Positions 12,301 to 35,767 of a stretch of 64,000 nucleotides of DNA are shown here, piece after piece. The notes under the pieces are model-generated. The model saw only the letters and a program-made list of their open reading frames with translations. It was not told the origin of the DNA and made no database searches. Source of the DNA: Octopus sinensis (taxonomy: Eukaryota); the NCBI RefSeq assembly GCF_006345805.1, contig NC_043001.1, forward strand, positions 21,328,001-21,392,000, given 5' to 3'. A program made the position numbers and the translations under genes. Each line of letters opens with the position of its first letter. Within the stretch, counting starts at the first letter, position 1.

Positions 12301-12400
12301 TCCCAAGATGCTTCAAATATTCCTCATAAATAAAAAAATAATCTCAAATCTGTCAACACTTTCTAACAGAAAGAAACATAAATTTAATCAACAGCACATT

Positions 12401-12928: not shown

Positions 12929-12961
<33 letters not shown>

Positions 12962-14083: not shown

Positions 14084-14839
14084 CAGGGCTTGCCAAAGGG
14101 GGACCCTAGGGGTCAGAGAGGAATTAAAGGGGTCAATGATAGCCAAGGGGTCGACGTGTGAAAGACCAGCCCACCCACATGAACTGCTTGAAATACTTAG
14201 CCAGTGCCATGCTCATCCCTCACATGGATGTTGTCAATTTCAATAAAAGATATTCCAGCAATATGATGCATTTTTCACATTTTCTAACCGTGAAAACAAC
14301 TTCATAAAAATTGAAAGTTTAATACTGTATACTCACACACATAGTTTTAAATATAAAGTGTGTATCGTCATCTTCAACAGAATTTCTTAATTTGTCGTAC
14401 ATGTATCTTTTAAAAATAAATAAAAAATAAATGCGCCCTTTTAAAGCCTAGGCTCATGGGCCCAGTTTCCCGGTTTCGATGGTGTATGTGTTCCCCAGCT
14501 GTACGGAATGCCAGTCCATCCCAGCGCTACTCATTTTTGCCAGCTGAGTGGACTGGAGCAATGTGAAATGGAGTGTTTTGCTCAAGAACACAATGCATTA
14601 CCCAGTCCAGGAATCGAAACCACAATCTTACGATCATGATGCTGACACCCTAAGCACTAAGCCATGCGCCTCCACACATGTATCTTTTAACTAACATTTT
14701 AATTGGCAGCATCAGTACCCAATTTAAGATATGGTACGGTAGGGTAGGGTATTAAGGTATTTTAAATGAGGAGGGTGGTCAATGCCGAAGGAGAAGTGGC
14801 TAAAGAGGGTCAATGGTTGAAAAAGTCTGGTGACCCCTG
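14084..14839. mobile_element. hAT-type non-autonomous element with 8-bp TSD
   Basis: Ends CAGGGcttgccaaa and tctggtgacCCCTG. Exact TSD cttcaata at 14076-14083 and 14840-14847. Confidence 0.8.
14414..14675 (-). mobile_element. Third tRNA-SINE family (CORE/Meta-like body) nested in the hAT element
   Basis: Head gtggaggcgcatggcttagtg..ggtttcgattcctgg, body tgtgttcttgagcaaaacact. 15-bp TSD acatgtatcttttaa at 14399-14413 and 14676-14690. Confidence 0.8.
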
Positions 14840-15316
14840 CTTCAATATATTTTTAAATCAAGGCAGTGAGCTGGCAGAAATGTTAGCATGCCAGACGAAA
14901 TGCTTAGCAGTATTTCCTGTCTCTACGTTTTGAGTTCAAATTCCACCGAGGTCGACTTTGCCTTTCATCCTTTCGGGGTCGATAAATTAAGTACCAGTTG
15001 CGTACTGGGGTCGATAAATCGACTGATCCCCTCCCTGAAAATTTCGGGCCTTGTGCCTAGAGCAGAAAAGAATATAACTTTAAAATCTCCTACAAACGAT
15101 GCATCTCAGATGCTAATGCTACATTTGTTTTTAAAGCCTGCTACTTTCACTTTCACTTTCACTTTCTGCCTACTCGAGAAAAGCTTTGGTCAGACTATAG
15201 AAGAAAATATTTATCCAAGGGACAGAACATAGAACCATGTGGTTGGGAAGTGAAGTTTTAATTCGCTTGTAACATCTAACTTTTAACCGAAAGGGATATT
15301 TAATCAAATAACTTAC

Positions 15317-15510
15317 TTCAGCATCAAGTGCAACTAATTTTTTTCTAAGCTTCTGAGATTCTATTTCCTCTCTTGCCAATTTCATTAATCTTTTTGTCAT
15401 TATTGTGTTTTGATGATTGATGGCTTTTAGTTCTTCTTGTTTTCGGCGTAATTCTGAGAGAATTTCATCATCCGGGTTATCTTCAACTTTTTCATCAAAA
15501 TCCAAAATTC
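15317..15510 (-). CDS. TADA3: TADA3 coding exon 8 (GILDFDEKVEDNPDDEILSELRRKQEELKAINHQN...LVALDAE)
   Basis: Overlaps track ORF 15170..15505. DE.L.ELR..Q.ELKA coiled coil of the ADA3 domain. Acceptor aatacag, donor gtaagt; phase 1 in, phase 0 out. Confidence 0.96.
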
Positions 15511-17243
15511 CTGTATTTAAAAATCAATAAAAACAATTAAAAATAAACAAAAAGAGAAAGAAAGACTTTTAAAACCCCACAAACGCAGGTCATCAATAAT
15601 GTACAACCTAAGATAATTAAGGTAATTAAGATGCTGAAATTTGCCCCTTGACTGGAGGAAGAAAACACAGAGCAAGCTGCAGTTGCTCCTGACTCTGAAA
15701 GAAAACTGAAGATAACCTCAAGAAATTCAGGTCCAATTTCTCAAATCAATTTATATACTCTTCTATTTGTTTCAGTCATTTGACTGCAGCCATGCTGGAG
15801 CACTGCCTTTAGTTGAACAAATCGACTCTAGGACTTATTCCCTGTAAGCCTAGCACCTATTCTATCAGTATCCTCTGCCGAACCGCCAAGCTATGGGGAT
15901 GTAAACACACTGGCATCAGTTGTCAAGCAATGGTGGGGAGACACACATACATATATATATATATGTTTAGGACAGGCTTCTTTTAGTTTCCGTCTACCAA
16001 ATCCACCCACAAGGCCCTGGTCAGCCCAAGGCTACAGTAGAAGACACTTGCCCAACCCAAGGTGCCATGCATTGGGACTGAACCCGGAACCATGTGGCTG
16101 GTAAGCAAGCTACCTACCACACAGCCACTCCTGTGCCTATGTTTAGGAAAAGATGAGGTAAGAGATGCATAGTACAGTCAGAACAGTAAATACTCTTTTA
16201 CTTGTTTCAGTCATTTGACTGTGGCCATGCTGGAGCACCGCATTTAGTTGAAGAAATCGACCCCAGGACTTATTCTTTTGTAAGCCTAGTACTTGTTCTA
16301 TTGGTCTCTTTTGTCGAACCGCTAAGTTACAGGGACGTAAACACACCAGCATCGGTTGTTGAGCGATGTTGGGGGGACAAACACAGACACACAAACATAC
16401 ACACACATATATATATATACATATATACGACGGGCTTCTTTCAGTTTCCATCTACCAAATCCACTCACAAGGCTTTGGTCGGCCCAAGGCTATAATAAAA
16501 GACACTTGCCCATGGTGCAATGTAGTGGGACTGAACCTGGAACTATGTGGTTCATAAGCAAGCTACTTACCAAAAATATACATTTTTTTTTTATAGAAAA
16601 GATTTATGGACATTTTTGGCCAAAATAATAAACTGAAACATGTTTGTAGAAGTTCCTTGAATGCAAACTAATAACAGACTATTCTTTCTCTAAACATATA
16701 TAAGGTGCATTTTTTTTTTCTAAAATCAAATTCTCAAAGGAAAATCAGTGTAGGTCCTATATGTGAAGTTGGGTCTATATTACATGCCTTAATGCACTAA
16801 AGAATTTATTTCCCTGAATATGTGCTGCTGAAATTGTGGCGGCAACTAATATACCTGTACATATTTTAGGCCATATACAGGAAATAAACTTGAGAAATTA
16901 ATTGATTTTCTTGAAATTGTTTCCCTAATTCTTTCAGAGTTGCTAACAATTGCCATCAAGTTATGCTTACTTCTTACAAGAGAAACATTTCAGTTAAGAA
17001 TTTATTACATACAACATTCAGTACCGCACACTTCAATCTAGTTATTCAAATTCATTCCCTTGGCTCACATATGTTATTACCCATAGCTTATTTTATTTTT
17101 TTGATTTAAGATACCTCACCCTAAGAGATAAGTTTGTTCATTTGCTTTTCCATGCTAGCATGGGTTAGACAGAAATGATAACACTATCACTACTCACAGT
17201 GACTTTCTTAGAGCACACATGTAAACAAACACAAAGACACACT

Positions 17244-17279
<36 letters not shown>

Positions 17280-17951
17280 CTTTCATCCTTTTTAACGTTT
17301 GTTTTCTATGCTGGCATGGCTTGGATGGGACATGGGCTTACTCTTTCACCCTCTCTTTCTCACATACCTCCCTCCCCCATAAGCCCACCCACCCCTACAC
17401 ATTTCTACTCCACCTTCCCTATCCTTCCGATGCCCCCATCCTATCCCACAAACCCTCTCCCACATACCCCAACCCTCAGCCAAACCCACACCCCACCCGT
17501 GCTTTCCTCACTCTCGCTTCCCCCACCTCCCAACATCACACCACACCACATTACACCATATATTACACATCACATCACAACACACCACCCACACACCTAT
17601 CCCCATATACATACACGCACACGTCCAGACCACCAGCCCTCTTTCACACACACATACATACTCTCTTATACACACATGCATCTTTGTGTTGGGGGGGGGT
17701 CATCTTTACTTTGTTATCTCCCCTACTTTCCCTCTCGTGTGTGACCCTTCTGTCCGAGCCAGTCGCCATGATAGATCGTTAGCCACTACACACATTTTTT
17801 TTCTCTCCTTGTTTTTTCTGTGTCCCTTTCTGTAGAAGAGCTTAGGCTTGAAACGCAAAAGACTTTTTCTATTCCTGAGCGTTACACTAATACATCTGTT
17901 TGTTTTGTACACCACCTGTCTTCATCTTTTGTTTTTTTCGTAAACTCTCCC

Positions 17952-17985
<34 letters not shown>

Positions 17986-18373
17986 ATGATGGGCCTCTTT
18001 CAATTTCTGTCTATCAAATTCGTACTTACCAGGCTTTGATTGGCCTTGGGATATAGAAGACATTTGCTCAAGGTGCTGTGCAGTGTAGCCGAACCCAAAA
18101 CTAAAGGATAGGAAAGGAAACTTCTAAACCATACAGCCATGCCTGCATCTATATTAATTATCCAAATCCATATCAGTAACCCCTCCTTAAGGGGTGGGTG
18201 GGGGTTAGTGATATGGATCTCTCTCTCGCTCTCTCTCTGGCATACATGCAATTAATCCCTATGTAATTTACAATAGAAAATTGTTGAAAACATATTTTAG
18301 TCCCTGCCCCATAGGAGTTGTGTGCAATTAGCGAAATGACTTTGAGTGAATATTTTAATGTAAATGAATTAAC

Positions 18374-18481
18374 CTTGTTCTTCTAGTTCTTTTTTAATTC
18401 TTTTTTCAAGCTGAACAGCATTGCTGATATTTAGCTGTTTGGCTAACATCTTTGGAGAAATTGATGGTGGATCTTCTAGGT
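18374..18481 (-). CDS. TADA3: TADA3 coding exon 7 (DLEDPPSISPKMLAKQLNISNAVQLEKRIKKELEEQ)
   Basis: 108 nt, phase 1-1. LE.RIK.EL matches TADA3. Acceptor ttttacatttcag, donor gttaat. Confidence 0.92.
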
Positions 18482-19447
18482 CTGAAATGTAAAAAAAAAT
18501 TCATCAAAATAGAGCAAATTCTATTCAACATTTAATCTAAGCTTTAACCTGTGAATTGTGTAATTGTTGCTAAAGCAAAACATCATATAAAGTTAGTGAA
18601 CAAAGGGATTTTCTGTACTGTTAGAGTAAAATGCATGTTAGATAAGATTCAATAAAAAAAACAAAAAAAAAAAAACAGAAAAAAGTTTGCATTTGTATAT
18701 CAATAAAGCTTCAAAGTAACATCTACTTTTCCATGTTTGCATGAGTCAGATGGAATTTGTTGAGTCAGATTTTCTACAGCCGCATACCATTTCTGTCGTC
18801 AATACTTACTTGTTTCCAGGCAGTCAAATTTCCCATGGAAACTATACGATGATGTTGCTTGACTTGTGATGCCAAAACAAGGGTGCATATACTCACACAT
18901 ACACTAATACATGCATATATAAGATGGGCTTCTCTCAGTTTCTGTCTACCAAATCCACTCACAAGACTTTGATTGGCCTAGGGCAATAGTAAAAGACACT
19001 TGCCCAAGGTGCCATGCAGTGGGATTGAACCTGAGACCACATGGTTGGGAAGCAAGCTTCTTAACCACACAGTCACACATGTAGCAATAAATTATTTAAT
19101 GCAAATCAACGCTGCTGTTTCTAAAACCTGTGAAAGGCAATGAGGAAGCTGATATAGTCATTTGAACTGCTACAAATAGCAGCAAAAATCTCTCTCAAAT
19201 CAAATCTAGTCTTAAATAAGGACATAGTGAACAATATAGTCTCAGCTACATAAAGATGGAATGGCCATGGATGGAATGCCTTTGACCACAGGCTTGCTTA
19301 ATCAGGGCAAACTTGTTGCTAAACAATATTATTAACAACAAATATAGCATATATGTAGTATATTCAAAATGTTGGCCAAAAAATTATTTCCAAAACTCAT
19401 TTATAAATATTTAGGGCCTTAGAACATTTGTTATAATATTATTAATT

Positions 19448-19685
19448 CAATTGCAGCGTGGAAGGTGTTTATAAGCCATTTAAGAAACACACAAAAACCG
19501 TTAGATTCATTTCAACATTTAAATTTAATTTGTCAAAATATTTTTGTCGAAGTTTTGTCAGTGAACAGGTTGCTGTCTCAAAGCGACGAAAATATTTTGA
19601 CAAATTAAATTTAAATGTTGAAGTGAATCTAATGGTATTTGTGTGTTTCTTAAATGGCTTATAAACACCTTCCACGCTGCAATTG
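19448..19685. repeat. Inverted repeat, arms about 100 bp, loop about 35 nt
   Basis: caattgcagcgtggaagg...gtcaaaatattt pairs with aaatattttgac...ccttccacgctgcaattg. Confidence 0.95.
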
Positions 19686-19805
19686 TTTTCGTTCCAGCAC
19701 ACACGATCTCAGATCAGGTCACTTGCTATGCAAGAACATCTCTGTAATTATTAATTCAAGTAGTGAGAAAGTGATAAAGTCAATCAACCATAGAGTATTT
19801 AATAC

Positions 19806-19918
19806 CTTTAGTGCTTATATCCGCTGTCGTATCGTCAACTGGTGCCATTACATGTTCTTCAATAAGTGCAGTAACAAGCCGTTGAGTAAGGGGACCAAAA
19901 GGGGAATCATCATTGGAA
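19806..19918 (-). CDS. TADA3: TADA3 coding exon 6 (SNDDSPFGPLTQRLVTALIEEHVMAPVDDTTADISTK)
   Basis: Carries the ADA3 motif PFG.LTQRL..AL.EE. Acceptor tttgtttcctttcag, donor gtatta; phase 2 in, phase 1 out. Confidence 0.95.
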
Positions 19919-20675
19919 CTGAAAGGAAACAAAAATTGCAATAACTAATTAATTGTCAAAATATAATGAGTACAACCAATGTCTTTGAATGAGGCATGAA
20001 CATCACACAATCTCATTTCTTCTGTCTTTTAATGCTGAAATGTTATGTTCGTGTATGTATCTAATATTTCTCAAACTATAAAGAAAATTTGAAGTAACTG
20101 TCTAACAAGTCAAGTCCTTGACTCAGTTTACAGATTTGGCCATATCGTAGACAGTCCGCTTCAACTTACTTCAGAAAGGCAAGATTATCATATCGTATCA
20201 TCACATCTCGACCACTGCCACCCTCTGTTACATGTACATAAAGCCTTCTGTCAGTGTAACATCACAAAAAAAAAAAAAAAACCTAACCAAAAAAAAACAC
20301 TATATTCCCAAAGCTAATACAACCAGTCTTTCTGTAACAAACAGAGGCACTTTCAAGAAAAGTTACAAAGAGTGTTTTCATTGCACAAACAATGGATGGT
20401 TAAGAATGGTCACATGACATAATAAATGTACTGACGATGAGATATTTCTTAACCAAGTGCATTACTTACTCAGACACAAACAGTCTTCATTCTGTGAATA
20501 TATTTCCTATGATTTAGCAGTAGATAGGTTTAGTGTAAATATTTAGTCAACAATGCCCTATCATCAAAGACATTTTAGTCTTAATCATCTCATGCTTTAG
20601 ATATAGTTTGCTCCTAATTACATTTTATTAAATGAGTCTTCTTTTTAAAGAAGACTCATTTAATAGAACTCAAAT

Positions 20676-21009
20676 TCCATCTGTCTAACACCCATGGACA
20701 TGTTTACATAGTCAGAAAACAGCACAGCTTCCATGACTTTCGGAAACATATTTTCACGCTAAGAGTTGTTGAAGTATGGAACAAACTGCCGGCATCAGTT
20801 GTTAGTTGTCAGAGCACTGCATCCTTCAAAACTTCCTGAGATTCGCCAACACTACACCTGATTTTCTCCCCTCCATACACACGCAAGCATTATCTGACTC
20901 ATACACTGTTCACTTCCCAGACATTTGTACATTACTGCATATGCTTTATACGCACTTTTGACAAGTTGTGGTGCACCTGAGCACTGTATACAATAGTTTC
21001 ATTATTATA
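20676..21009 (+). mobile_element. CR1-clade LINE 3' end, second copy, abutting the RTE copy
   Basis: Highly similar to 3498-3834. Confidence 0.8.
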
Positions 21010-21010
21010 T

Positions 21011-22945
21011 CAAGCCATGTACAGAGATGCCGTAAGTAAGGTTAGGGTTGGCAACATGTACACAGAAGAATTCAAAGTAGAGGTTGGGGTCCACCAGGGT
21101 TCAGTACTCAGCCCCCTCCTATTTATCATAGGCAACTACGGAGGAATTCAAGACAGGCTGTCCCTGGGAGCTCCTCTACGCTGACGACCTTGCTCTTATT
21201 GCTGAGTCACTATCAGAACTGGAGGAGAAGTTCCAGGTGTGGAAGGAGGGTTTAGAATCAAGGGGCCTTAGAGTCAACCTAGCTAAAACCAAAGTACTAA
21301 TAAGTAGAAAGGTAGACAATCCACAAATATCTTCAGGAAGATGGCCCTGCTCGATCTGTAGAAAAGGTGTAGGTAGAAACTCTATAAGATGTACCCAGTG
21401 TAAGCTATGGATACATAAAGGTGCAGCAATGTCAAACTGGGAAGATAGTTTTTGTATGTGGCAGATGCTCGGGAGCATTAACCCGAAAATCTGCAGAAAA
21501 CAACTTCCGTCACTTTCCAGGGGGAAAAACTAGAAGTAGTTGATAGCTTCCGTTATCTAGGTGACCAAGTCAGTAGTTGGGGGGGTGCGCTGAAAGTGTT
21601 AACTGCTAGAATAAGAATAGCCTGGGCAAAGTTTAGGGAGCTCTTACCTCTGCTGGTGACTAAAGGCCTCTCGCTCAGAGTAAAAAGCAGACTGTATGAT
21701 GCGTGTGTACGAACAGCCATGCTACATGGCAGCGAAACATGGGCCGTGACTGCTGAGGACATGCGTAAGCTCGTGAGGAATGAAGCCAGTATGCTCCGAT
21801 GGATGTGTACATACTCGACAGAGCGTTAGCACCTTGAGAGAAATGTTGTACCTAAGAAGCATCAGTTGTGGTGTGCAAGAGAGACGATTGCGCTGGTATG
21901 GTCATGTGGCGAGAATGGATGAAGATAGGTGTGTGAGAAAGTGCCAATCCCTAGCAGTTGAGGGAACCCGTGGAAGAGGTAGACCCAGGAAAACCTGGGA
22001 CGAGTGGTGGTGAAGCACGACCTTCGAACTTTAGGCCTCACTGAGGAAATGACCAGAGACCGAGACCTTTGGAAATATTCTGTACATGAGAAGACCAGGC
22101 AGGACAAGTGAGCCCAGCCCACTTATGAATGCCTTTCCTCCCTTGGACACAAAGACCGGTTGAGGCAAGCGAAGTCGATATAGAACCTCATCCGACGACA
22201 GACACCCATGCCAAACCCCCATGCTTGCGAAGACATGTTGGGGCAAGCGAAATCGAAATCGAAATCGAAACCGAATTGAACCAGCCAGGATCCCTGGCCT
22301 GGTGGTACGTAAAAAGCACTATCCGACTCGTGGCCGTGGCACGTAAAATACTCCAATGCGACCGTACGACAGGCACCCATGCCAACCCCTTTGCTTGTGA
22401 AGACATGTTGGGGCAAGCGAAATCGAAATCGAATTGAACCAGCCAGGATCCCTGGTCTGGTGGTACGTAAAAAGCACTATCCGACTCGTGGCCGTGGCAC
22501 GTAAAATACTCAATGCGACCGTACGACAGGCACCCTTGCCAACCCCTTTGCTTGTGAAGACATGTTGGGGCAAGCGAAATCGAAATCGAATTGAACCAGC
22601 CAGGATCCCTGGTCTGGTGGTACGTAAAAAAGCACTATCCGACTCGTGGCCGATGCCAGCACCGCCTCGACTGGCTTCCGTGCCGGTGGCACATAAAATA
22701 CACCAATCTGACCGTGGCCGTTGCCAGCCCCGCCTGGCACCTGTGCAGGGTGGCACGTAAAAAGCACCCACTACACTCACGGAGTGGTTGGCGTTAGGAA
22801 GGGCATCCAGCTGTAGAAACATTGCCAAATTAGACTGGAGCCTGGTGCAGCCTTCTGGCTTCCCAGAACCCCGGTCGAACCGTCCAACCCATGCTAGCAT
22901 GGAGAACGGACGTTAAACGACGATGATGATGATGATGATGATGAT
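21011..22945 (+). mobile_element. 5'-truncated RTE-clade LINE: RT C-terminal half, Cys/His finger, tandem-repeat 3' UTR and (GAT)n tail
   Basis: Translations include GVHQGSVLSPLLFII, LLYADDLAL, GLRVNLAKTKVL, ARIRIAWAKFRELLPLL, RLRWYGHVARM and GRGRPRKTW. Frameshifted. The sequence continues into the abundant tggcacgtaaaaagcacc repeat. Confidence 0.9.
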
Positions 22946-23852
22946 GGTAGAGCCAACAAAAATCTAGGCAGTCCATCATCATCATCATCGTTTAGTGTCC
23001 GCTTTCCATGCTAGCATGGGTTGGACGGTTCGACTGGGGTCTGGGAAGCCAGAAGGCTGCACCAGGCCCAGTCTGATCTGGCAATGTTTCTACGGCTGGA
23101 TGCCCTTCCTAACACCAACCACTCTGTGAGTGTAGTGGGTGCTTTTTACGTGCCAGACGAGGCTGGCAAACGGCCACGATCGGATGGTGCGTTTTACATG
23201 CCATCGGCCAGTCGAGGCAGCGATGGCAACGGCCACGTTCCTTTCAATTAATTCCAAAGGAAAAAAGTACTCAAAAATTCATTTACTTTCTCCGTTTCTT
23301 AAATATTCAAAATCTCAAAGTTAAATCAATCTAGCTTACAAAAAAAAGAATGAATCAAGACGAAATTTAATTTGATACATTAATGTTGAATATTTATTAA
23401 TCAAAACAACTACAAATTAATTATAATGGAAAGTTATTTTCTATCAATATTAGAATGCATTTCTTTCTTTCTTTTTTTTTGCTCTCAGCGCAACAGTGAA
23501 TTTTTGAAGCATACAAGAAGTGAATAGGACAAACAATCGAAGCATTCAGGTGGATATGACAATTATTTAGGAGATTTGTGTGGAAGTAACAAGCAACAAG
23601 TCAATAGCAGGAGATAAAAAAAAATCCCAAAATAAACAAGCATGTTAGAAAGAGAGAGAGAGAGAAAAAAAGGAAAGGTTTAATACCCAGTGCAAAGAAG
23701 ATTGCTCATATGTTAATAGAAGAAATATTTGAAATAAAATATGCTTTAAGAATTTCTTTTTTTTTCCAAAAATTCCTTACAGTTTCTTACGAGTCTTAAA
23801 TTGCATACCACATTTCAATTAAAGAATTATCGACTCAGTAAGATGATTTTAA

Positions 23853-24076
23853 CCCTTTAGCATTTAAACAAGCCATATCTGACCCAAATATTCTACCAGT
23901 TTTTTGTTCAAACTGGTCAGATCTGGCCTGTCATACCTATCCTACAATGTCATTCTAAAAAATATATAATCGCATCATTGAAATCTCAAAGTTACAAAGT
24001 AGTGTAGGATTAATTCAAAACATTGTGAATAAATAAGCATTACATTCGACAGAATAATAACCATGATGCTAAAGGG
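23853..24076. mobile_element. piggyBac-like MITE
   Basis: TTAA|CCCTTTAGCAT ... ATGCTAAAGGG|TTAA, i.e. a TTAA target duplication with CCC-starting TIRs. Confidence 0.8.
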
Positions 24077-24604
24077 TTAAGGAATTTCAGTTTCAAAAAT
24101 TAAAAAAGCTTCAATTAGAGAGAGAAGGGGATGGGGGAGGAATCTTGAGTAGAACTTGTTTTCTTTTCTCCAATTTCTTAACCGTGGAAGAAGATAAGGT
24201 GGGGAGAAGTATCAAGAAAAAAAAAAACAAAAACGAATTAGATGAAAGATAGAAGGAACAAGCAGAATTTGAGGTAAATGTGATTCCTGGTAAGGTAAGG
24301 TAACAGGGGAGGGGGTAGGGGGTAGGAATATAAATCAAAAAATATACTCACCCTTTCCTGTTGTAAGAGCAACAAGAAAGAAATAATTGTTAGTTAGATT
24401 GTCTGTAGTTGAGATTACTTTCATAAAACCTCACTAGTAACTAAAGCAAACATTTACAAAATATACCGAGTTTAAGTGAGCTGTGATAACACTCGCTTGA
24501 AAAACACAGCCTTTATACTAAGTGAAGACTGATGATATATCTGCACTGAATGGTAAGCTTTCTGTTGTTGTTATCAGTGTAATCTGTTAGTAAACAAAAT
24601 AAAA

Positions 24605-25540
24605 TCATCATCATCATCGTTTAACGTCCGTTTTCCATGCTAGCATGGGTTGGGCGGTTAGACTGAGGTCTGGGAAACCAGAGGGCTGCACCAGGCTCCA
24701 ATCTTGATCTGGCAGTGTTTCTACATCTGGATGCCCTTCCTAATGCCAACCACTCCGTGAGTGTAGTGGGTGCTTTTTACGTGCCAGGCGAGGCTGGCAA
24801 CGGCCACGATCGGTTGGTGCTTTTTATGTGCCACCGGCACGGAAGCCAGTCAAGGTGGCACTGGCATCGGCCACGTTCGGATGGTGCATTTTACGTGCCA
24901 CCAGCATGGAAGCCAGTCAAGGCGGCGCTGGCATCGGCCACATTCTGATGGTGCATTTTACGTGCCACCAGCATGGAAGCCATTCAAGGCGGCGCTGGCA
25001 TCGGCCACATTCTGATGGTGCATTTTACATGCCACCGGCAGTGTTACATGCCATCTGGCAGTGTTTCTACATCTGGATGCCCTTCCTAATGCCAACCACT
25101 CCGTGAGTGTAGTGGGTGCTTTTTACGTGCCAGGCGAGGCTGGCAACGGCCACGATCGGTTGGTGCTTTTTACGTGCCACCGGCACAGAAGCCAGTCAAG
25201 GTGGCACTGGCATCGGCCACGTTCGGATGGTGCATTTTACGTGCCACCAGCATGGAAGCCATTCAAGGCGGCGCTGGCATCAGCCACATTCTGATGGTGC
25301 ATTTTACATGCCACCGGCAGTGTTACATGCCATCTGGCAGTGTTTCTACATCTGGATGCCCTTCCTAATGCCAACCACTCCGTGAGTGTAGTGGGTGCTT
25401 TTTACGTGCCAGGCGAGGCTGGCATCGGCCACGTTCGGATGGTGCATTTTACGTGCCACCAGCATGGAAGCCAGTCAAGGCGGCGCTGGCATCGGCCACG
25501 TTCGGATGGTGCTTTTTACCACAGGGATCACAACTACAAT
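24605..25540 (-). repeat. RTE-3'UTR/Ceph-like short repeat with internal tandem triplication; representative of about 15 copies
   Basis: catcatcgtttaacgtccg..ctggatgcccttcctaa.gccaaccactcc. Other copies near 12940, 13565, 22976, 29975, 38625, 40200, 51465, 55055, 56130, 56650, 57805 and 60640. Confidence 0.85.
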
Positions 25541-26057
25541 TTCCAATGAACAGAATTGTAGCTTGTATTTTGTTTTGGTAAATAAGAAATAATGACATCT
25601 TCTACGAGACTGTACAACAAGCTGAACATCCCTCTATGTCAGGCATTTTTTTAATCTTCTTCTTGTTCCAGTCATTAGATCAAGGCCATGCTGGGGCACT
25701 GCCTTGCAGGATTTTTAAACAAATGAAATGGCTCCAGTACTTATTTTCTTACTTTTTCTATTGGTCGCTTCCCCTCCGGACTGCAAAGTTACAGGGATGT
25801 AAACACACCAACACCGGTTGTCAAGCAGTGGGTGGAGGCAAACACAGATACAAAGACACACAGGATATATATATATATTCTTTTATTTGTTTACTTGTTT
25901 CAGTCATTTGACTGCGGCCATGTTGGAGCACCACCTTTAGTTGAACAAATCGACCCTAGGATTTATTCTAGGGTTACAAGGACGTAAACACACCAGCATC
26001 GATTGTCAAGCGATGGTGGGGTGGGGGGACAAACACACACATAAACATATATATATA

Positions 26058-26577
26058 TACTAGCAGTATCGCCCGGCGTTGCTCGGATTTGTAAGGGAAA
26101 TAACTATATAAGCATTTTTAGAGAGTTACTTCCCTTATAGATGCCAATTCGGGCTTTCTTAGCCATTTCTGTTTTGGTGTCTTCAAGCCATGAAGTCGTT
26201 GTTCTAAAAGAACGCTGGTCTCCTTGACAACGCTTTACGACGTTGATTTCCTTACTCTCCCTTCCCCACAGCTTCACGAGGGAGGGAAGAAGGGGGAGAA
26301 GCAAACACAGGTGCAGGTGTTTGAGCGTGGACGCCAACTCCACCGCCATCGACACACGAAAAATTATGCATTAAAATGGAATAAAAAATGATGTTAAATT
26401 ATTTTTAAAATCGTAGACTCATCGTAGACGCGCGCTAATACTCAGACGGGCTCGATATGAATCACGACTATAAGATACCCGAATTTGGTTAAACTGCACC
26501 GCAAAATGTGGGAGTAGTTAGGAATCTAAATCGAAGGGGACAGACACTCACACAACTACAGTTTTATATATATAGAT
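26058..26577 (+). mobile_element. Non-autonomous Helitron-like (Lep1/HINE-type) element inserted in a SINE (TA)n tract
   Basis: 5' end tactagcagtatcgcccggcgttgctcgg, 3' end acagacactcac..ttttatatatatagat. No TSD; it splits a SINE copy. Confidence 0.65.
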
Positions 26578-27823
26578 ATATATATATGACAGGCTTCAAT
26601 TTCCGTCTACCAAATTCACTCACAAAGCTTTGGTTGGCCCGAGGGTAGAGCAGAAGACACTTGCCCAAGGTGCCATGCAGTGGGACTGAACTCAGAACTA
26701 TGTGGTTGGTAAGCTTGCCACATAGCTACTCCTCCTACAACATATATATATATATATATATATATACACAACAGACTTCTTTCAGTTTCTGTCTACCAAA
26801 TCTACTCACAGGGCTTTGGTTGCCTGAAGATTATAGTAGAAGACACCTGCCCAACTTGTCACGCAGTGGGACTGAACCTAGAACCATGTAGTTGAGAAGC
26901 AAACTTCTTACCTCACAGCCAATGTACAACCTTTTCCAAGAAGTGCGTTGCATGAGACAAGGCTCTTCATCAGGTAAGTCACAATACCAAAAAAAAAAGA
27001 TTCAAGGTAATTTTTTGTTAGGCATACCATTCAGAAAGTACTCCAGGCTGCAGTTCACTCATGGTTACTCTATGTCATTACTCATCCTACTAGAAAAAGC
27101 AACCAATTTCCTTCGACTACACCCTACTGTCTTGTATAAAGAAAGGACATGTTAGATAATGTATCCTACATAACTTTAATTAAGACAGGATATATACAGC
27201 TGGAACACCTTTGATCATACATCTGCTCAAATAAGGTTGATAAGGGGATAGCTAAGCAACAAATGCAATAGGCAATAGTGTTGGTCCCATCATATATAGA
27301 GGACTGCAGCCTCTATATTTTTGCATCTTCAAGTAAAATATACTAGATATTAAAGGTGAAATAATTTTGAAAAATAATGTTTTCTACATATTTTTTTATG
27401 CTTTTTTTTTTATTGTTTACTTGTTTCAGTCATTAGACTGTAGCCATGCTGGGGCATGGCTTTGAAGAAAATTTAGTCGAATGAATCGAACCCTGTACTA
27501 AATTTTTTTTAAAAGCCTGGTACTTATTTTATTGGTTTCCTTGCTGAACCACTAAGTTACAGGCTCATAAACAAACCGGTAACAGGTGTCAAGCTGTGGT
27601 AGGGGACAAGCACAGACACACACACACACATATATGAGCTTCTTTCAGTTTCCACCAACCAAATCTACTCACAAGTGTTTGGTTGAGCTGAGGCTATACT
27701 AGAAGGCACTTGCCCAAGGTGCCATGCTGTGGGACTGAACCAGAACCATGTGACTAGAAAGTAAATTTCTTACCACACAGCCATGCTTGCACCGATCAAT
27801 ATAAAAAAATAAATTGATAAGTA

Positions 27824-27895
27824 GGTCTCATGGTGTAATGGTTAGCACTCTGGAATCTGAATCTAGCAATCTGAGTTCAAGTCTCGGTGAGACCT
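27824..27895 (+). tRNA. tRNA-Gln (anticodon CTG at 27857-27859), possibly decaying copy
   Basis: 72-nt cloverleaf: acceptor stem GGTCTCA/TGAGACC, D arm GGTGTAATGGTTAGCAC, anticodon arm CTGGA-ATCTGAA-TCTAG, T arm CTGAG-TTCAAGT-CTCGG. A TTTT run follows about 7 nt downstream. A32 and two G.U pairs deviate from the canonical metazoan Gln-CTG. Confidence 0.8.
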
Positions 27896-28587
27896 TATAT
27901 ACTTTTATAGGCACAGGAGTAGCTGTGTGGTAAGTAGCTTGCTTACCAACCATATGGTTCCGGTTCAGTTCCACTTGGCAAGTGTCTTCTACTATAGCCT
28001 TGAGCCGACCAAAGCCTTGTGAGTGGATTTGGTAGACGGAAACTGAAAGAAGCCCATCATATATATGTATATGTATATATGTGTGTGTGTGTGTGTATTT
28101 GTGTGTCTGTGTTTGTCCCCCCAACATCGCTTGACAACCGATGCTGGTGTGTTTACATCTGCATAACCTAGCGGTTCGGCAAAATAGACCGATAGAATAT
28201 GTACTAGGCTTACAAAGAATAAGTCCTGGGGTTGATTTGCTCGACTAAAGGCGGTGCTCCATCATGGCCGCAGTCAAATGACTGAAACAAGTAAAAGAGT
28301 AAAGAGTATCATTATTATTATTATTACTATTACTATTATTATTATTTAATGTTCTCTTCCCATGTTGGCATGGTTGGATGATTAGACAGGATCCTGCATC
28401 GAACTCCAGTGTCAGCTTTGGCATGCTTTCTATGGCTGGATGCCCTTCCTAACTTCAACCTTTTTACAGTATGTAATAAATAAAAGAAAAAAAACTGTAA
28501 ACATGAATTGGTTCCACAAACGAAAAAAAAAAGTTTCAATGAGAAAGAAGTACCTTAAAAAAATAAGTTACGAAACTTAAAACTTAC

Positions 28588-28681
28588 CAACTTTCAGATT
28601 TTTTTAAGAGGTTGGTAGATTCATTGGAATTTGTTGCAGTTGAGTTATTGTTATTCCGTCGTTTATCAGAGATCTTGGCAC
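28588..28681 (-). CDS. TADA3: TADA3 coding exon 5 (GAKISDKRRNNNNSTATNSNESTNLLKKSES)
   Basis: 94 nt, phase 1 in, phase 2 out, which links exon 4 to exon 6 in frame. LLKKSE matches TADA3. Donor gtaagt; acceptor is a weaker aaaaag. Confidence 0.85.
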
Positions 28682-29179
28682 CTTTTTAGGAAGATAAATG
28701 AAAGAAAATGGTTTAGTAATAAGATGAAAAAAAGTTTCAAGATGAATTAAAAAATCGAATTTTACAAAAATTCAAGAATCCTCAAGACAGCTGCATGAGT
28801 CAGATTTGAGATCAAAGAGTTATGAAGTTGGAAAGTCCATTTCAGTTACATTGCAACAAAATAAACCAAAAAGTTGTTAACCTAAATCAACTTGGTTAAT
28901 GCTCCCCTCCCAGCTGAAGCGGGGTTTTATCTTGCAAGTTACTTGGTGACTATGTTTGTGCTGGCACCATGTAAAAAGTAGCAGTGTTGATGCCATGTAA
29001 AAAGCACTGGTGATGGTGCCATGTAAAAAGAAGTGGCTGTGTGGTAAGTAGCTTGCTTACGAACCACATGGTTCCGGGTTCAGTCTCACTGCGTGGCACT
29101 TTGGGCAAGTGTCTTCTACTATAACCTTGGGCCGACCAAAGCCTTGGATTTGGTAGATGGAAACTGAAAGAAGCCTGTC

Positions 29180-29208
29180 GTATATATATGTATATCTATA
29201 TATATATG

Positions 29209-29263
<55 letters not shown>

Positions 29264-29272
29264 CTATATATA

Positions 29273-29318
<46 letters not shown>

Positions 29319-29422
29319 TATATATATGTATATCTATATATATGTATATATATATATATATATATATGTATATCTATATATATGTATATATATATATATA
29401 TATATGTATATCTATATATATG

Positions 29423-29469
<47 letters not shown>

Positions 29470-29470
29470 C
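29180..29470. repeat. Long compound (TA)n/(TG)n microsatellite inside a SINE
   Basis: Directly visible. Similar tracts at about 400-500, 1590-1855, 5240-5430, 6570-6620 and 63370-63540. Confidence 0.95.
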
Positions 29471-31515
29471 TGTGTTTGTGCCCCCCAACATCGCTTGACA
29501 ACCGATGCTGGTGTGTTTACATCCCTGTAACTTAGTGGTTCGGCAAAAGAGACCGATAAAATAAGTACTAGGCTTAAAAAAGAATAAGTCCTGGGGTCGA
29601 TTTCCTCAACTAAAGGTGGTGCTCCAGCATGGCCGCAGTCAAATGACTGAAACAAATAAAAGCATAAAAGAATACGCTCTGTAAAGTGGTTGGCTTCTAG
29701 CTGTAGAAACGATGCCAAAATAGACAATGGAACCTAGTGTGGCCCCTGGCCTTACTAGCTGCTGTCAAAAAGTCCAAACCAAGTTAGCATGGAAGGTAGA
29801 TGTTAAATGATGAGGATGATTATGATGAAGTGAATAATGAGAAAGGTCGATTCCTCACTGAGATCATACCGGCCACACACACACACACACACACGAGGTG
29901 TATGGTGATACTGAAATGAAGCCCCAGCTGCAGTACTGTGATGATAATACTACTACTACTACTACTACTTCGGCGTCGTCGTTTAACGTCCGTTTTCCGT
30001 GCTAGTATGGGTTGGACGGTTCGACCGAGGTCTGGGAAGCCAGGAGGCAGCACCAGGCTCCAGTCTGATCTGGCAGTGTTTCTACAGCTGGATGCCCTTC
30101 CTAATGCCAACCACTCCGTGAGTGTAGTGGGTGCTTTTTACGTGCCACCAGCACAGTTGCCAGGGGAGGCTGGCAACGGCCACGATCAGTTGATGCTTTT
30201 TACGTGCCACCGGTACAGAAGCCAGTCAATGTGGCGCTGGCATCGGCCACGTTCGGATGGTGCTTTTTACGTGCCACCGGCACAGAAGCCAGTCAAGGTG
30301 GCGCTGGCATCGGCCACGTTTGGATGGTGCTTTTTACGTGCCACCGGCACAGGTATCACAACTACAATTTCCATTTGATTTCTATTTTGATGTTGATGTA
30401 CTTGACTCAGTAGGTCTCCTCAACCACAGCAGCACTATTTATAAAATTACCAAGGATCCAAATACAAGGTATCACTAACAATGTTACCACAAAAAGTTTT
30501 TGCTTTATATTGGAAGGAGGAGGAGGAAAAGAAGGTGCTGCCACCACAATTTTAAATAGCAAATCTTTATATCTGTTTATACATTTACTTTGTTTTTATG
30601 TCTGTTTTTTCCATGGTAGCATGAGTTGGATGAATATATTATTGAGGTATGTGATTTTGGGTTCAATCCCACTTCATGGTATTTAGGCAGGTGTCTTCTA
30701 CTATAGTCATAGGCAAATCAAAGCCTTGTGAGTAGATATGGCAAATAGAAACTGAAAGAAGCCTGTTGCATGTGTAAGTTTCCTGTCTTGACATTGCACA
30801 TCTGTTGTAAGCAAGCATCACCATCATACAGTTGTTGTTTGTGTTTCCAATCTTTTGTGAAAATATCCCTTGGCAAGGGGAAAGATTACCTCCCTTGCAA
30901 ACAGGTGCTGGCTGGCAACAGGAAAGGCATCTTGCCATAGAAAAATCTGCCTTAACAAAATTCTCTGTGACACATGCTAGCATGGAAAAGTAAATGTTAA
31001 AATGATGATGATGATGACGATAAAGTTACACTGAATAAGAAATCCTCTATGTCTACCAGTGAGAAGCACAAATAGATTGTATTAACAAAATTTATGGCTG
31101 GATGCCCTTTCTGTAAAATTGTTGGCATCAGGAAGGGCATCCAACCATGAAGATCATGCTAAAAGAGACCTCGCGGTTGCTGGTGCTACATGTAAAAGGA
31201 ACCAATCTACTCTGTAAAGTGATTGGTGTTAGGAAGGGCATCCAACCATAAAAACCATACCAAAAGAAACCGTGCTGGTGTTTCTTGGAAAGCAGTCAGG
31301 TCACTCTGTAAAGTGGTTGGTGTTAGGAACGGCATCCAGCTGCAAAAAGCATGTCAAAACAGACAGTGGAGCTTAGTGTACTCCTCTGGCTAGCCAGATC
31401 CTGTCAAATTATCCGACCCATGCCAGCATGGAAGATGGACATTAAATGTTGATGATGATGATGATGAAAACTGATATACTGAAAAGCAAACAGAATGGGA
31501 ATTTAAGATATGTAC

Positions 31516-31765
31516 CTTCTTTTTGTTCATCCATGATATCTTCTTGAGCCCATCGTTCCGAGTAATGTTTGCCCAAAGGCGGAATTTTGAAAAACTCACT
31601 ATCATCTTTAATTGTCACCAGAACTTCTTCTAGAACTTTCATATCTTCAGTACTGATTTCTGCACAGTAAGGATCAACCGATGCCCAAAAGCGATTTACA
31701 ATATCATTTTTCTGGCTACGAGCTATGTCAGAAGATTCCGAAATGTCATAGTCAGGCATTTTCAC
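31516..31765 (-). CDS. TADA3: TADA3 coding exon 4 (VKMPDYD...NRFWASVDPYCAEI...FKIPPLGKHYSERWAQEDIMDEQKE)
   Basis: Track ORF 31442..31765 carries the hallmark ADA3 motifs NRFWASV.PYCA.I and KIPPLGKHYS.RWAQED. Acceptor ttttctctag, donor gtacat; phase 0 in, phase 1 out. Confidence 0.97.
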
Positions 31766-32692
31766 CTAGAGAAAATACAAATGTTTTTAAAAAATTAGGA
31801 GTCGTATTATTTTGGTTCTTTAATCTGTCACCTGAAAACAGAACATTAGAATTTTTAAAATCAAACATGTCAACACTAATATCTATTTTTTACTTAACAA
31901 AATCCCATAAAAATTATGCCAACCACATGGTTCCAGGTTCAGTCCCTCAGTATGGCACCTTGGGCAAGTGTCTTCTACTTTAGCCTCGGGCTGACCAAAG
32001 CCTTGTAAGTGGATTTGGTAGAAGGAAACTGAAGCCTGTGGTATAACCTACATACATACATATATATATGTATATGTGTGTATATTTGTGTGTCTGTGTT
32101 TGTCCCCGCACCATCTCTTGACAACTGATGCTGGTGTGTTTACATCCCCATAACTTAGCAGTTTGGTAAAAGAGACCAATAAAATAAGTACTAGGCTTAC
32201 AAAGAATAAAGTTCTGAGGTTGATTTGTTTGACTAAAAGGTGGTAGCCACAGTCAAATGACTGAAACATATAAAAGAGTAAAAAAAGAGCAACATGTAAG
32301 TCCTCAACACATTAGGTGCAAATAAATTTGCATTCTTAAACAGTGGTTTCAAATTAGGGCAGCAAGCTGGCAGAATTATTAACATGTTGGGCAAAATGCT
32401 CAGCAACATTTTGTCCGTGTTTACATTCTGAGTTCAAAACCTGCCAAGGTTGACTTTGCCTTTCATCCTTTCAGGGTCAACAAAATAAGTACCAGTTGAG
32501 CACTGGGGTCGATATAATCGATTACCCCATCTCTGCCAAAATTTGAAACCAATATAATGGTTTCAAGTAATGGCACAAGGCCAGAGATTTTTGGTTAGAG
32601 GTGGGGTGAGTCAATTACATCATTCTCAGTGCTCAACTGGTACTTTATTTTATTGACCCAGAATGGATGAAAACTGAAGTTGACCATGGTAG

Positions 32693-33000
32693 TAATTACT
32701 TGTACTTGTGGTGACATTCACCCTGGGTGAGTTGAGTCGGCTTCTTCTACCACCCTCAAGGCATCTCGAACCATGACAGCCCATGCACGACGGTCCTGCA
32801 CCAGTTCACAGGAGATAGTGAGCCAGTCACGGTTCCATAGGTGTAGGCCAACCACCTGCAGTCCCGTGAGCATGGAGAGGTCCTCCTTGATCGTTGTAAC
32901 CCAGGTCTTCAGCTGCCCGCCCGCGCGTTTCCGCCAGTTGGGAAGTGGAGTTGGGAGAAGGACATCACGGAAGTTGGGAGGACATCACCCGTGATGTCCA
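32693..33000 (-). mobile_element. 3' end of a different, GC-rich RTE family with 12-bp TSD
   Basis: Open frame RDVLLPTPLPNWRKRAGGQLKTWVTTIKEDL...QDRRAWAVMVRDALRVVEEADSTHPG* followed by a CAAGTA tail. TSD tgaccatggtag at 32681-32692 and 33001-33012. Confidence 0.8.
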
Positions 33001-33339
33001 TGACCATGGTAGAATTTGAACACAGAATGTAAAGCTGGAAGAAATGTCGCTAAGCATATTTCACAATGCAATAATGATTCTTCCAGCGCTCCTATTTTAA
33101 AAAAATATATCAAATTTTGTTACGAGGATATTTTTCTAGAGGCTGCTTTATGGAAAAGAAACCACCACTAGAACCCCTTGAGCAGCTAGTGTGTAGGAAA
33201 GCGGTGGAAGGAGTTCAGTGAATCGTAACCTCTTGGTAAAGGGAAGATTTCTCTTGCCACATGAATGACAGAAGCAAATGTAAGAATTGTGATGCTACAT
33301 GTTGGGAGACATGAACTATCTCTGTGTGAAATATTGACA

Positions 33340-34895
33340 GCAGGATCAGTCCTCAGCCCCCTCTTATTCATCATAGTCCTTCAGGCAATAACAGAGGAAT
33401 TCAAGATGGGCTGCCCCTGGGAGCTCCTGTATGCTGATGACCTTGCTCTACTAGCTGAATTATTATCAGAACTAGAGAAGTTTCAGGTGTGGAAGCAAGG
33501 TCGAGAATTGAAGGGCCTTAGAGTCACTCTAGCAAAAATCAAGTCTTAGTAAGTAAGAAGGCAGACAAATCACAAGTCCTTTCAGGTAGATGGCCCTGCT
33601 TGATCTGTAGAAAAGGCATAGGTAGAAACTCCATAAGATGTACCTGGTGTAAGCTATGGACATGCAGCAATATCAAAGGAAGGTTAACTGGGAAGATGGT
33701 TTTTGCGTGTAGCAGTTGCACAGGGGCAATAAACACCAAAGATGTTTATTGATTCCATCACATGCCAGGGGAAAAAACTAGAAGTAGTTGATAGCTTCCA
33801 TTACCTAGGTGACCAAGTCAGTAGTGGTGATGGATGCTCTGAGAGTGTAGCTGCAAGAATAAGAATAGCCTGGGCATAATTCAGAGAGCTCCTACCTTTG
33901 CTGGTAACAAGAGGTTTCTCACTCAGAGTGAAAGGTTGACTGTATGATGCAAGTGTGCAAACAGCCAATGCTACACGGCAGTGAAGCATGGGCTGTGACT
34001 GCTGAGGACGTGTGTAGGCTTGAAAGAAATGAAGCTAGTATACCTCGCTGGATGTGTAATATCAGTGTGCATACGTGAGAGAGTGTAAGCGCCCTGAGAG
34101 AAAAGTTGGGCATAAGAAGCATCAGATGTGGTATGCAAGGAGTAATATCAGTGTGCATACGTGAGAGAGTGTAAGTGCCCTGAGAGAAAAGTTGGGCATA
34201 AGAAGCATCAGATGTAGTATGCAAGGAAGATAACTGTGCTGGTATGGTCATGTGTTGTGTATCGATGCGGATAGCTGTGTTAAGTGTCACACCCTAAGAG
34301 TGGAGGGAATCTGTGGAAGAGGAAGATCCAGGAAGATATGGTATGAGGTGGTGAAGAACAACCTTCGAACATTGGATCTCACAGAGGCAATGACAAGCAA
34401 CCAAGCCCTTTGGAAATATTCTATAAATGAGAAAACCCGGCAAGTCAGGTGAGATCGTAGCTGTGGTTGATGCCAGTGTCGCATATGAAAGTACCCTTCA
34501 CTTGTCAGGCATTATGCTGTACTTGAGAAGACCTGTTGAGTCAAGTGAAATCATAGCCGTGGCCGATGTCAGTTCTGCCTGACAGGCACCCATGCCAGTA
34601 GCATGTAAAAAGCACCACTTGAGCGTGGCTGATGCTAGTGCCACCTGACTGGCATATAAAAAGCACCATTCAAGCGTGGTTGATGCCAGCGCTGCTGACT
34701 GGCCCCTGTGCCAGAGGTACGTAAAAAGCACCCACTACACTCTCAGGGTGGTTGGCATTAGGAAGGGCATCCAGCTGTAGAAACCTTGCCAGATCAGATT
34801 GGAGCCTGGTGCAGCCCCCTGGCTTGCCAGTCCTCAGTCAAACTGTTTAACCCATGCCAGCACGGAAAGCGGATGTTAAACAATGATGATGATGA
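33340..34895 (+). mobile_element. Second decayed RTE copy with the same 3' UTR; internal tandem duplication of about 85 bp near 34060-34230
   Basis: GSVLSPLLFIIVLQAITEEFKMGCPWELLYADDLAL in track ORF 33265..33549. Ends in gatgatgatg. Confidence 0.85.
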
Positions 34896-35767
34896 ATATA
34901 AACACTTCACTTCTACAAGACTTTCTCAGCTTGTGCTTTGCCTTTCATGTAGGTTAACATGACATAAACAATGGATCATAGTTACATCACTGCTGTCAAT
35001 CTTTCACACACAGGTAATTCATGTCTCCCAACATTTAGCATCACTATTCTAACATTTGCTTCTGTCATTCATGTGGAAAGAGAAATCCTCCATTTACCAA
35101 GGGGTTACAATTTCCTGAACTCCTTCCACATCTTTCCTACTCTCTGGCTGGTCAAGAGGCTCTGGTGGTGGTTTCTTTTCCATAAACCAGCCAAAGAGCC
35201 ACTTGAAAAATATCCATGTAACAAAATTTTATATATTTTTAAAAAATAGGAACAATATTGATTCAACGAATTAAGCTGGCAAGCTGGCAGAATCGTTAGC
35301 ATGCCAGACAAAATACTTAGAGGCATTTTGTCAGTTTTTATATTCTGAGTTCAAATTCCTCCGAGGCTGACTTTGCCTTTCATCCTTTTGGGATCGATAA
35401 AATAAATACCAGTTGATGTAACTGACTCAGTTCCTCTCCCGAAATTGCCGGCTTTGCACCAAAATGTGAAACCAGGGTTATTGCTGTGAATTAAAATGAT
35501 GTGAATGGGCTTGGGGTTACTGGTGCAGTAAAGAGGAGGGCCATAAATTCCATTATTGAAGCTGCGACTTGATCAACTGCAGGTGTGGATTAACTGGGTG
35601 AAGGGTCTGATGTTAAAAGACTCGAAACCCTCCATGGGACCCCACAAACATCACTGATGATGCATCCCAGAGTATCCATCAGATGTATCTCAGATCTAAG
35701 AAATATAATAATTTTAAATTTGCATGTAAAATTGGAACAATTAGAATTTAATTGGAAAGTTACTAAC

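What the first reader, a model, noticed from the sequence alone, without database searches (positions are those of the whole stretch)
24352..24357. Candidate 6-nt neural-type microexon (GAAAGG) in TADA3
Seen on the minus strand: aatctaactaacaattatttctttcttgttgctcttacaacag|GAAAGG|gtgagt. This gives a consensus branch point (ACTAAC, about 32 nt upstream), a clean pyrimidine tract, a UGC at about -12 to -14 and a strong donor. It is frame-preserving in the phase-2 intron: SES-C-SND becomes SES-WKG-SND. Established: a UGC near the 3' splice site is the signature of SRRM3/4 (eMIC)-activated neural microexons in bilaterians. Inference: a regulated, probably neural, TADA3 isoform that standard annotation would miss.
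Basis: partly seen in the sequence, partly recalled or inferred. Interest (0 to 1): 0.75.

Follow-up and report, generated by a model that had tools for sequence, protein, structure and literature searches.

The report
Real 6-base TADA3 microexon, already annotated
The six bases GAAAGG are a genuine, alternatively spliced mini-exon of the octopus TADA3 gene that is conserved in argonauts and cuttlefish, but it is already in the public RefSeq annotation of this genome and its proposed brain-specific use remains untested.

Summary
Window 24357-24352 (minus strand) reads cag|GAAAGG|gtgagt, with a doubled CUAAC branch site, a pyrimidine tract and a UGC at -14..-12. It lies in a phase-2 intron of TADA3, and inclusion turns SES-C-SND into SES-WKG-SND.

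The exon is real:
- The window is 100% identical to Octopus sinensis chromosome CM016863.1. The 453-aa protein I built with the exon is an exact match to RefSeq XP_029636100.1 (O. sinensis isoform X3) and XP_014769423.1 (O. bimaculoides). The 463-aa isoform X1 also carries WKG.
- Sepia esculenta transcript assemblies exist with and without exactly these 6 nt at the same junction.
- The exon with both splice sites is the best-conserved colinear block of the 8.7-kb intron against Argonauta hians.
- Haliotis and Lingula have the same phase-2 intron, but it is short and has no such exon.

The claim that standard annotation would miss it is therefore wrong for this genome. The O. vulgaris model, the Argonauta model I retrieved and the newer O. 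bimaculoides model do omit it.

Neural or eMIC-dependent regulation fits the cis-motifs but could not be tested here. This is an ordinary, already catalogued microexon of modest interest.

The parts
24352..24357 (-). 6-nt cassette microexon GAAAGG. With the split codon it encodes Trp-Lys-Gly in place of Cys.
   Evidence: Sequence and translation. The spliced product is an exact match to RefSeq XP_029636100.1 / XP_014769423.1. The same 6 nt are in the Sepia esculenta transcript L002 and absent from the otherwise identical L006 and L007.
24358..24397 (-). 3' splice-site region: doubled branch site CTAACTAAC (24397-24389), pyrimidine tract (24386-24365), UGC (24371-24369, positions -14..-12) and AG (24359-24358).
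   Evidence: The tract, the UGC and the AG are conserved in O. vulgaris, O. bimaculoides and Argonauta hians. Argonauta keeps a CTAAT branch-like site. The motif set matches the eMIC-exon description in PMC8797185.
24346..24351 (-). Strong 5' splice site GTGAGT, preceded by exonic ...GG.
   Evidence: Identical in all four octopod genomes.
24332..24392 (-). Conserved block spanning the microexon and both of its splice sites.
   Evidence: Best HSP between the Octopus and Argonauta orthologous introns: 85% over 66 nt, E = 8e-13.
24213..24274 (-). Colinear conserved intronic block about 80-140 nt downstream of the microexon. It contains AATTCTGCTTG and is a candidate splicing-regulatory element.
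   Evidence: 73% over 64 nt, colinear in Argonauta. Its function is inferred only.
23595..23651 (-). Second colinear conserved intronic block, about 700 nt downstream.
   Evidence: 80% over 60 nt, colinear. Function unknown.
28588..28681 (-). Upstream constitutive coding exon (...NLLKKSES + TG). Donor is TTG|gtaagt.
19806..19918 (-). Downstream constitutive coding exon (T + SNDDSPFGPLTQRLV...). Acceptor is tttcag|T.
11648..58553 (-). TADA3 (Ada3) coding region, from ATG to stop, on the minus strand.
   Evidence: tblastn with homologues and a manual splice model. The protein is identical to Octopus RefSeq TADA3 isoforms. The window is 100% identical to O. sinensis CM016863.1.

Best explanation
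GAAAGG at 24357-24352 is a genuine 6-nt cassette microexon in a phase-2 intron of Octopus sinensis TADA3, the Ada3 subunit of the SAGA/ATAC histone-acetyltransferase module. Shown: it is spliced in or out. Skipping gives ...SES-C-SND... and inclusion gives ...SES-WKG-SND.... Both forms are public RefSeq isoforms, and both occur in Sepia esculenta transcript assemblies. The exon and its splice signals are conserved across octopods. The identical hexamer is used in a cuttlefish, so the exon predates the octopod/decapod split. Inferred: an exon this short cannot be recognised by ordinary exon definition. It depends on unusually strong flanking signals (doubled CUAAC branch site, long pyrimidine tract, GUGAGU donor) and on an activator bound near the 3' splice site. 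The conserved UGC at -14..-12, the long AG-free zone and the CUAAY branch site match the published cis-code of exons activated by the eMIC domain of Srrm234 (SRRM3/4). The most likely regulation is therefore eMIC-dependent inclusion enriched in neurons, with skipping elsewhere. At the protein level the three residues fall in a predicted disordered linker, 5 residues before the invariant SPFGPLTQRL helix. They probably tune an interaction of the acetyltransferase module rather than its fold.
For: Existence and annotation: the constructed 453-aa product is an exact match to XP_029636100.1 / XP_014769423.1, and the 463-aa X1 isoform also has WKG. The window is O. sinensis. Independent transcripts: Sepia L002 has TG|GAAAGG|TTC, and L006/L007 are identical over about 1.9 kb apart from a 6-nt gap and at most one mismatch. 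The L002 run, SRR31864759, is cited by a Sepia esculenta paper. Conservation: the exon and splice sites are identical in O. vulgaris, O. bimaculoides and Argonauta, and form the top colinear HSP of the intron. Not chance and not a repeat. Cis-code: UGC near the 3' splice site, a long AG exclusion zone, a UC-rich tract and a CUAAY branch site are the features reported for eMIC exons (PMC8797185), and all are present. Protein context: residues 271-273 lie in a segment with pLDDT below 50 (248-277), just before helix 282-293.
Against: No tissue-resolved data could be reached. The only traceable inclusion transcript comes from whole larvae. In the Sepia-type cluster, inclusion was assembled in 1 contig against 17 contigs for skipped forms. 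That shows only that it is a minor isoform in those libraries. The UGC/branch-site/tract match is a resemblance to a motif profile, not a test of eMIC dependence. No paper in the library links TADA3 to a microexon. The AlphaFold model is of low overall confidence (mean pLDDT 65), and no solved TADA3 structure was found by sequence, so the protein-level effect is speculative.
Confidence: 0.55

Rival explanations
1. The microexon is real and conserved, but it is not a neural eMIC target. It may be included at a low, roughly uniform level, or be controlled by other factors or in another tissue or stage (for example gonad or embryo, through PTB-, MBNL-, CELF- or Nova-type proteins binding the conserved C/U-rich and UGCU-containing downstream blocks).
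For: Inclusion was seen in whole-larva RNA and as a minority of assembled contigs. Conserved downstream intronic blocks exist at 24274-24213 and 23651-23595, and one contains UUCUGCUUG, which could bind other regulators. UGC trinucleotides are common in pyrimidine tracts.
Against: The full combination of eMIC-type features is present and conserved: UGC at -14..-12, an AG-free zone of about 44 nt, a CUAAC branch site and a UC-rich tract. Very short exons of 3-15 nt are, from published surveys (my own knowledge of Irimia 2014 and Torres-Mendez 2019), predominantly neural.
Confidence: 0.42
2. The site is a chance match to splice-site consensus, and the WKG isoforms are prediction or assembly artefacts.
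For: Short motifs arise by chance. AGGAAAGGGT is expected about 0.12 times per 64 kb.
Against: There are independent Sepia transcript contigs with and without the hexamer and RefSeq isoforms in two Octopus species. The exon and splice sites are conserved in Argonauta within an otherwise diverged intron. Neither flanking splice site contains a GAAAGG that could produce the insert by an alternative donor or acceptor.
Confidence: 0.02

Closest known systems
RefSeq TADA3 isoforms of Octopus sinensis (XP_029636098.1 X1, XP_029636100.1 X3) and O. bimaculoides (XP_014769407.1, XP_014769423.1)
   Same: It is the same exon. The protein spliced from this window with GAAAGG included is residue-for-residue identical to XP_029636100.1 / XP_014769423.1. 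The window is 100% identical to the O. sinensis chromosome that carries the gene.
   Different: Nothing differs at the sequence level. The database entries are computed models with no stated tissue pattern or function, and no paper found here describes the exon.
eMIC-domain (Srrm234 / SRRM3 / SRRM4)-activated neural microexons of bilaterians
   Same: It is 6 nt long and frame-preserving. It has a UGC close to the 3' splice site, a long AG-free zone, a UC-rich pyrimidine tract, a CUAAY branch site and conserved intronic flanks. It lies in a disordered surface linker next to a conserved motif.
   Different: Neural enrichment and eMIC dependence were not tested. The 5' splice site here is strong, which resembles mammalian rather than fly eMIC exons. 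TADA3 is not a reported microexon host.
6-nt neuronal microexon of TAF1 (exon 34', N-TAF1), and other microexons in chromatin or transcription cofactors such as KDM1A/LSD1 exon 8a (from my own knowledge, not checked here)
   Same: A tiny in-frame exon adds two or so residues to a general transcription or chromatin cofactor.
   Different: It is a different gene and lineage with no homology of the exon, and the neural specificity of the octopus exon is unproven.

Membership tests
Cassette microexon (3-27 nt) | Length of 27 nt or less, with canonical AG...GT boundaries inside an intron | tested here: met
   6 nt, cag|GAAAGG|gtgagt, about 4.2 kb from the upstream exon and 4.4 kb from the downstream exon.
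Cassette microexon (3-27 nt) | Present in spliced transcripts | tested here: met
   Sepia esculenta contig L002 carries ...GAGAGCTG|GAAAGG|TTCTAATG.... RefSeq isoforms with WKG exist in two Octopus species.
Cassette microexon (3-27 nt) | Alternative: both inclusion and skipping occur in one species | tested here: met
   L002 against L006/L007 differ by a 6-nt gap and at most one mismatch over about 1.9 kb. O. sinensis and O. bimaculoides have isoforms of 463/453 aa (included) and 461/451 aa (skipped).
Cassette microexon (3-27 nt) | Preserves the reading frame | tested here: met
   Cys becomes Trp-Lys-Gly and the downstream frame is unchanged.
eMIC/SRRM-dependent neural microexon | UGC motif close upstream of the 3' splice site, with a long AG exclusion zone, pyrimidine tract and CUAAY branch site | tested here: met
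   UGC at -14..-12, AG-free for about 44 nt, CTAACTAAC near -33. All are conserved in the Octopus species. UGC, tract and AG are conserved in Argonauta. Criteria are from PMC8797185.
eMIC/SRRM-dependent neural microexon | Higher inclusion in neural than in non-neural tissues | not testable with these tools
   No read-level or tissue-resolved data were available. The one traceable inclusion contig is from whole larvae.
eMIC/SRRM-dependent neural microexon | Inclusion depends on the eMIC domain of Srrm234/SRRM3/4 | not testable with these tools
   This needs a minigene or a knock-down experiment.
Ada3/TADA3 (Pfam PF10198) | The host gene encodes an Ada3-family protein | tested here: met
   The homologues found carry PF10198 and are named transcriptional adapter 3. 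Identity is 100% to Octopus TADA3 isoforms and 56-60% to other molluscs.

The most novel reading that the evidence does not exclude
The 6-nt exon is a coleoid-cephalopod innovation. It is absent from the short orthologous phase-2 introns of Haliotis and Lingula. Together with the neighbouring 30-nt alternative cassette at 41466-41437, it would give neurons a distinct TADA3 and so a neuron-specific variant of the SAGA/ATAC acetyltransferase module. That would be a lineage-specific recruitment of a general chromatin cofactor into the eMIC microexon programme of a large-brained invertebrate.
Probability: 0.35. Interest if true: 0.45.

Novelty: already known. Interest (0 to 1): 0.22.

Why it matters
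The result shows that a sequence-only reader can pick out a true 6-nt exon from its splice signals alone, which is useful as a positive control for the scan. Biologically it adds little, because the exon is already in the RefSeq models of this genome. Three points have some value. First, a 6-nt exon has kept the identical hexamer since before the octopod/decapod split. Second, it sits in a general chromatin cofactor. Third, several current cephalopod annotations omit it (O. vulgaris, the Argonauta model I retrieved, and the newer O. bimaculoides set), so microexon-aware re-annotation would recover it. If tissue data showed neural restriction, it would be one more documented lineage-specific eMIC-type target.

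Tried and rejected
1. An exact look-up of my first 435/437-aa gene models failed. I had missed a 48-nt exon, and adding it gave the exact RefSeq match.
2. Lingula TADA3 has two extra residues (AES-VEL-SEE) at the same place, which suggested a homologous microexon. I rejected this. The Lingula gene has the same phase-2 intron (about 140 nt), and the extra residues belong to the downstream exon.
3. Haliotis rufescens has the same phase-2 intron. It is about 590 nt of tandem repeat, and I saw no microexon in it by eye.
4. Among 67 TADA3 proteins from many phyla, only cephalopods carry WKG. These are single representative isoforms, so this is weak negative evidence.
5. A junction-peptide profile search for more WKG fragments returned only four short genomic-fragment ORFs and nothing useful.
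6. Look-ups of P0171, P0051 and P0055 as genes failed, P0171 and P0051 probably because only the longest product of a gene is on record.
7. No PDB chain matched TADA3 by sequence.
8. Literature searches for TADA3 plus microexon, and for cephalopod or octopus microexons, found no description of this exon. The 2026 preprint with O. bimaculoides tissue splicing has no supplements held.
9. I checked the idea that the site lies in a transposon and rejected it. Positions 24000-24603 are unique in the window.

Full report
**Observation.** On the minus strand the window reads ...acagacaatCTAACTAACaattatttctttcttgtTGCtcttacaacag|GAAAGG|gtgagtatatt. GAAAGG occupies 24357-24352, the acceptor AG 24359-24358 and the donor GTGAGT 24351-24346. 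The UGC lies at -14..-12. The doubled CUAAC branch site puts a branch A near -33. The nearest upstream AG is about 46 nt away.

**Host gene.** tblastn with homologues, followed by manual splice-site placement, gives a TADA3 (Ada3, PF10198) gene on the minus strand from 58553 to 11648. The exons flanking the candidate are 28681-28588 (...NLLKKSES + TG | gtaagt) and 19918-19806 (tttcag | T + SNDDSPFGPLTQ...). The intron is phase 2. Skipping gives TGT (Cys), and inclusion gives TGG AAA GGT (Trp-Lys-Gly).

**Is it more than chance?**
- AGGAAAGGGT occurs once in the window.
- Both strands of the 64 kb hold 459 AG-N6-GT sites. Six have a GTRAGT donor, and only this one also has at least 70% pyrimidines upstream.
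- Of 137 AG-N(3-27)-GTRAGT sites, it is the only one that also has a UGC, a CUAAY-like branch site and an AG-free zone. These criteria were set after seeing the site, so they are descriptive only.
- The surrounding 600 nt are unique in the window. A SINE-like repeat with more than 20 copies starts at 24604.

**Direct evidence that it is an exon.**
- A full-length search found Octopus, Argonauta and decapodiform TADA3 proteins. Aligning them showed that my first model lacked a 48-nt exon.
- Once that exon was added, the 453-aa protein with WKG was an exact match in the protein collection. It equals XP_029636100.1 (O. sinensis isoform X3), XP_014769423.1 (O. bimaculoides X3) and UniRef A0A0L8IFS5.
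- The 463-aa isoform X1 (XP_029636098.1 / XP_014769407.1) also carries WKG. The 461-aa and 451-aa isoforms carry the single Cys.
- The window is 100% identical over 48.5 kb to O. sinensis CM016863.1 (GCA_006345805.1), where the 463-aa product is the gene's recorded product. The exon is therefore already annotated in the source genome.

**Independent transcripts.**
- A Logan-assembled transcript, L002, from run SRR31864759 encodes AES-WKG-SND and reads ...GAGAGCTG|GAAAGG|TTCTAATG....
- A Sepia esculenta paper that sequenced pools of whole hatchling larvae cites that run.
- Two other contigs of the same transcript, L006 and L007, are identical to L002 over about 1.9 kb, apart from a 6-nt gap and at most one mismatch.
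- This demonstrates alternative splicing of the same hexamer in a cuttlefish.
- In that protein cluster the inclusion form was seen on 1 contig, against 17 contigs for the Sepia-type skipped forms. It is a minor isoform in those libraries.

**Genomic conservation.**
- The exon and both splice sites are identical in O. vulgaris (L004), O. bimaculoides (L005) and Argonauta hians (L001, 22973-22978).
- Between the Octopus (8.7 kb) and Argonauta (7.8 kb) introns, the best HSP is the block 24392-24332, at 85% over 66 nt with E = 8e-13.
- Two further colinear blocks lie downstream, at 24274-24213 and 23651-23595. The other hits are dispersed repeats.
- The pyrimidine tract and the UGC at -14..-12 are retained in Argonauta.
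- Lingula and Haliotis have an intron at the same position and phase. It is short (about 140 nt and about 590 nt) and I saw no microexon in it. The two extra residues in Lingula belong to its downstream exon.
- None of about 60 non-cephalopod TADA3 representatives has the insert.
- Within this sampling the exon looks like a coleoid innovation inside an ancient intron.

**Mechanism.**
- Shown: the exon exists, is alternatively used, preserves the frame and is conserved together with its flanks.
- Inferred: a 6-nt exon is too short for normal exon definition and needs strong signals plus an activator.
- The cis-features here are a UGC near the 3' splice site, a long AG exclusion zone, a UC-rich tract and a CUAAY branch site. 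These are the features reported for exons activated by the eMIC domain of Srrm234/SRRM4. That programme is described as neuronal and as dating to the bilaterian ancestor (PMC8797185).
- Neural, eMIC-dependent inclusion is therefore the most likely regulation. No tissue-resolved data were reachable, so I put it at about 55%, against about 42% for a real exon with some other regulation.
- In an AlphaFold2 model (mean pLDDT 65), residues W271-K272-G273 fall in a low-confidence linker (248-277), 5 residues before the invariant SPFGPLTQRL motif and helix 282-293. This fits the usual placement of microexons beside interaction motifs. The functional effect is speculative, and no solved TADA3 structure was found by sequence.

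**Comparison with what is known.**
- As an object, this is the exon already modelled in RefSeq.
- As a kind, it is an ordinary short cassette microexon with eMIC-type motifs.
- No paper in the searchable library links TADA3 to a microexon or describes cephalopod microexons in detail.
- Annotation is inconsistent. The two O. vulgaris models and the one Argonauta model I retrieved (isoform X2) lack the exon. For the newer O. bimaculoides assembly the longest recorded product is the 461-aa skipped form.

**Verdict.** Novelty is 'already known' and interest is low to modest.

Noticed in passing
window 41437-41466 (minus strand): A 30-nt alternative cassette exon of TADA3 (catag|GGTCGTCCAAGAAGCAGATGGAGGAATGAG|gtaata, encoding GRPRSRWRNE). 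It is present in the 463/461-aa isoforms and absent from the 453/451-aa isoforms. It sits inside a block of about 245 nt (41540-41302) that is 90% identical to Argonauta, which is more conserved than most of the coding exons and suggests a regulated exon.
   Followed up: partly
window 49222-49269 (minus strand): A 48-nt coding exon (ENSVVKNKNETLKNFP), conserved in Argonauta and decapodiforms. It is present in all cephalopod proteins retrieved.
   Followed up: partly
window 24213-24274 and 23595-23651 (minus strand): Two colinear intronic blocks downstream of the microexon are conserved between Octopus and Argonauta. The first contains AATTCTGCTTG within a C/T-rich stretch. They may be splicing enhancers or silencers.
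   Followed up: no
window 24604-24700, and at least 20 further copies (e.g. 22836-22933, 29976-30062, 60636-60732): A SINE-like element of about 100 nt is repeated throughout the window at 75-94% identity. Tandem arrays of related sequence lie at about 22100-23300 and 24600-25600 inside the same intron.
   Followed up: partly
window about 21017-22013 and 33265-34452: ORFs that look to me like reverse-transcriptase fragments (e.g. ...VGVHQGSVLSPLLFII..., ...YADDLALLAE...). They are probably LINE remnants in TADA3 introns.
   Followed up: no
L009 (Haliotis rufescens) 3480-3930: The orthologous phase-2 intron in abalone consists almost entirely of a tandem repeat of about 38 nt (GATACGTTGTAACATGTGCTTGTGGTTGTTGAGATTTT).
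   Followed up: no
L005 (O. bimaculoides GCA_001194135.2): The genome keeps the intact microexon (about 28215). Even so, the longest product on record for this assembly is the 461-aa skipped isoform, so the newer annotation seems to have dropped the WKG isoforms that the 2015 annotation had.
   Followed up: partly
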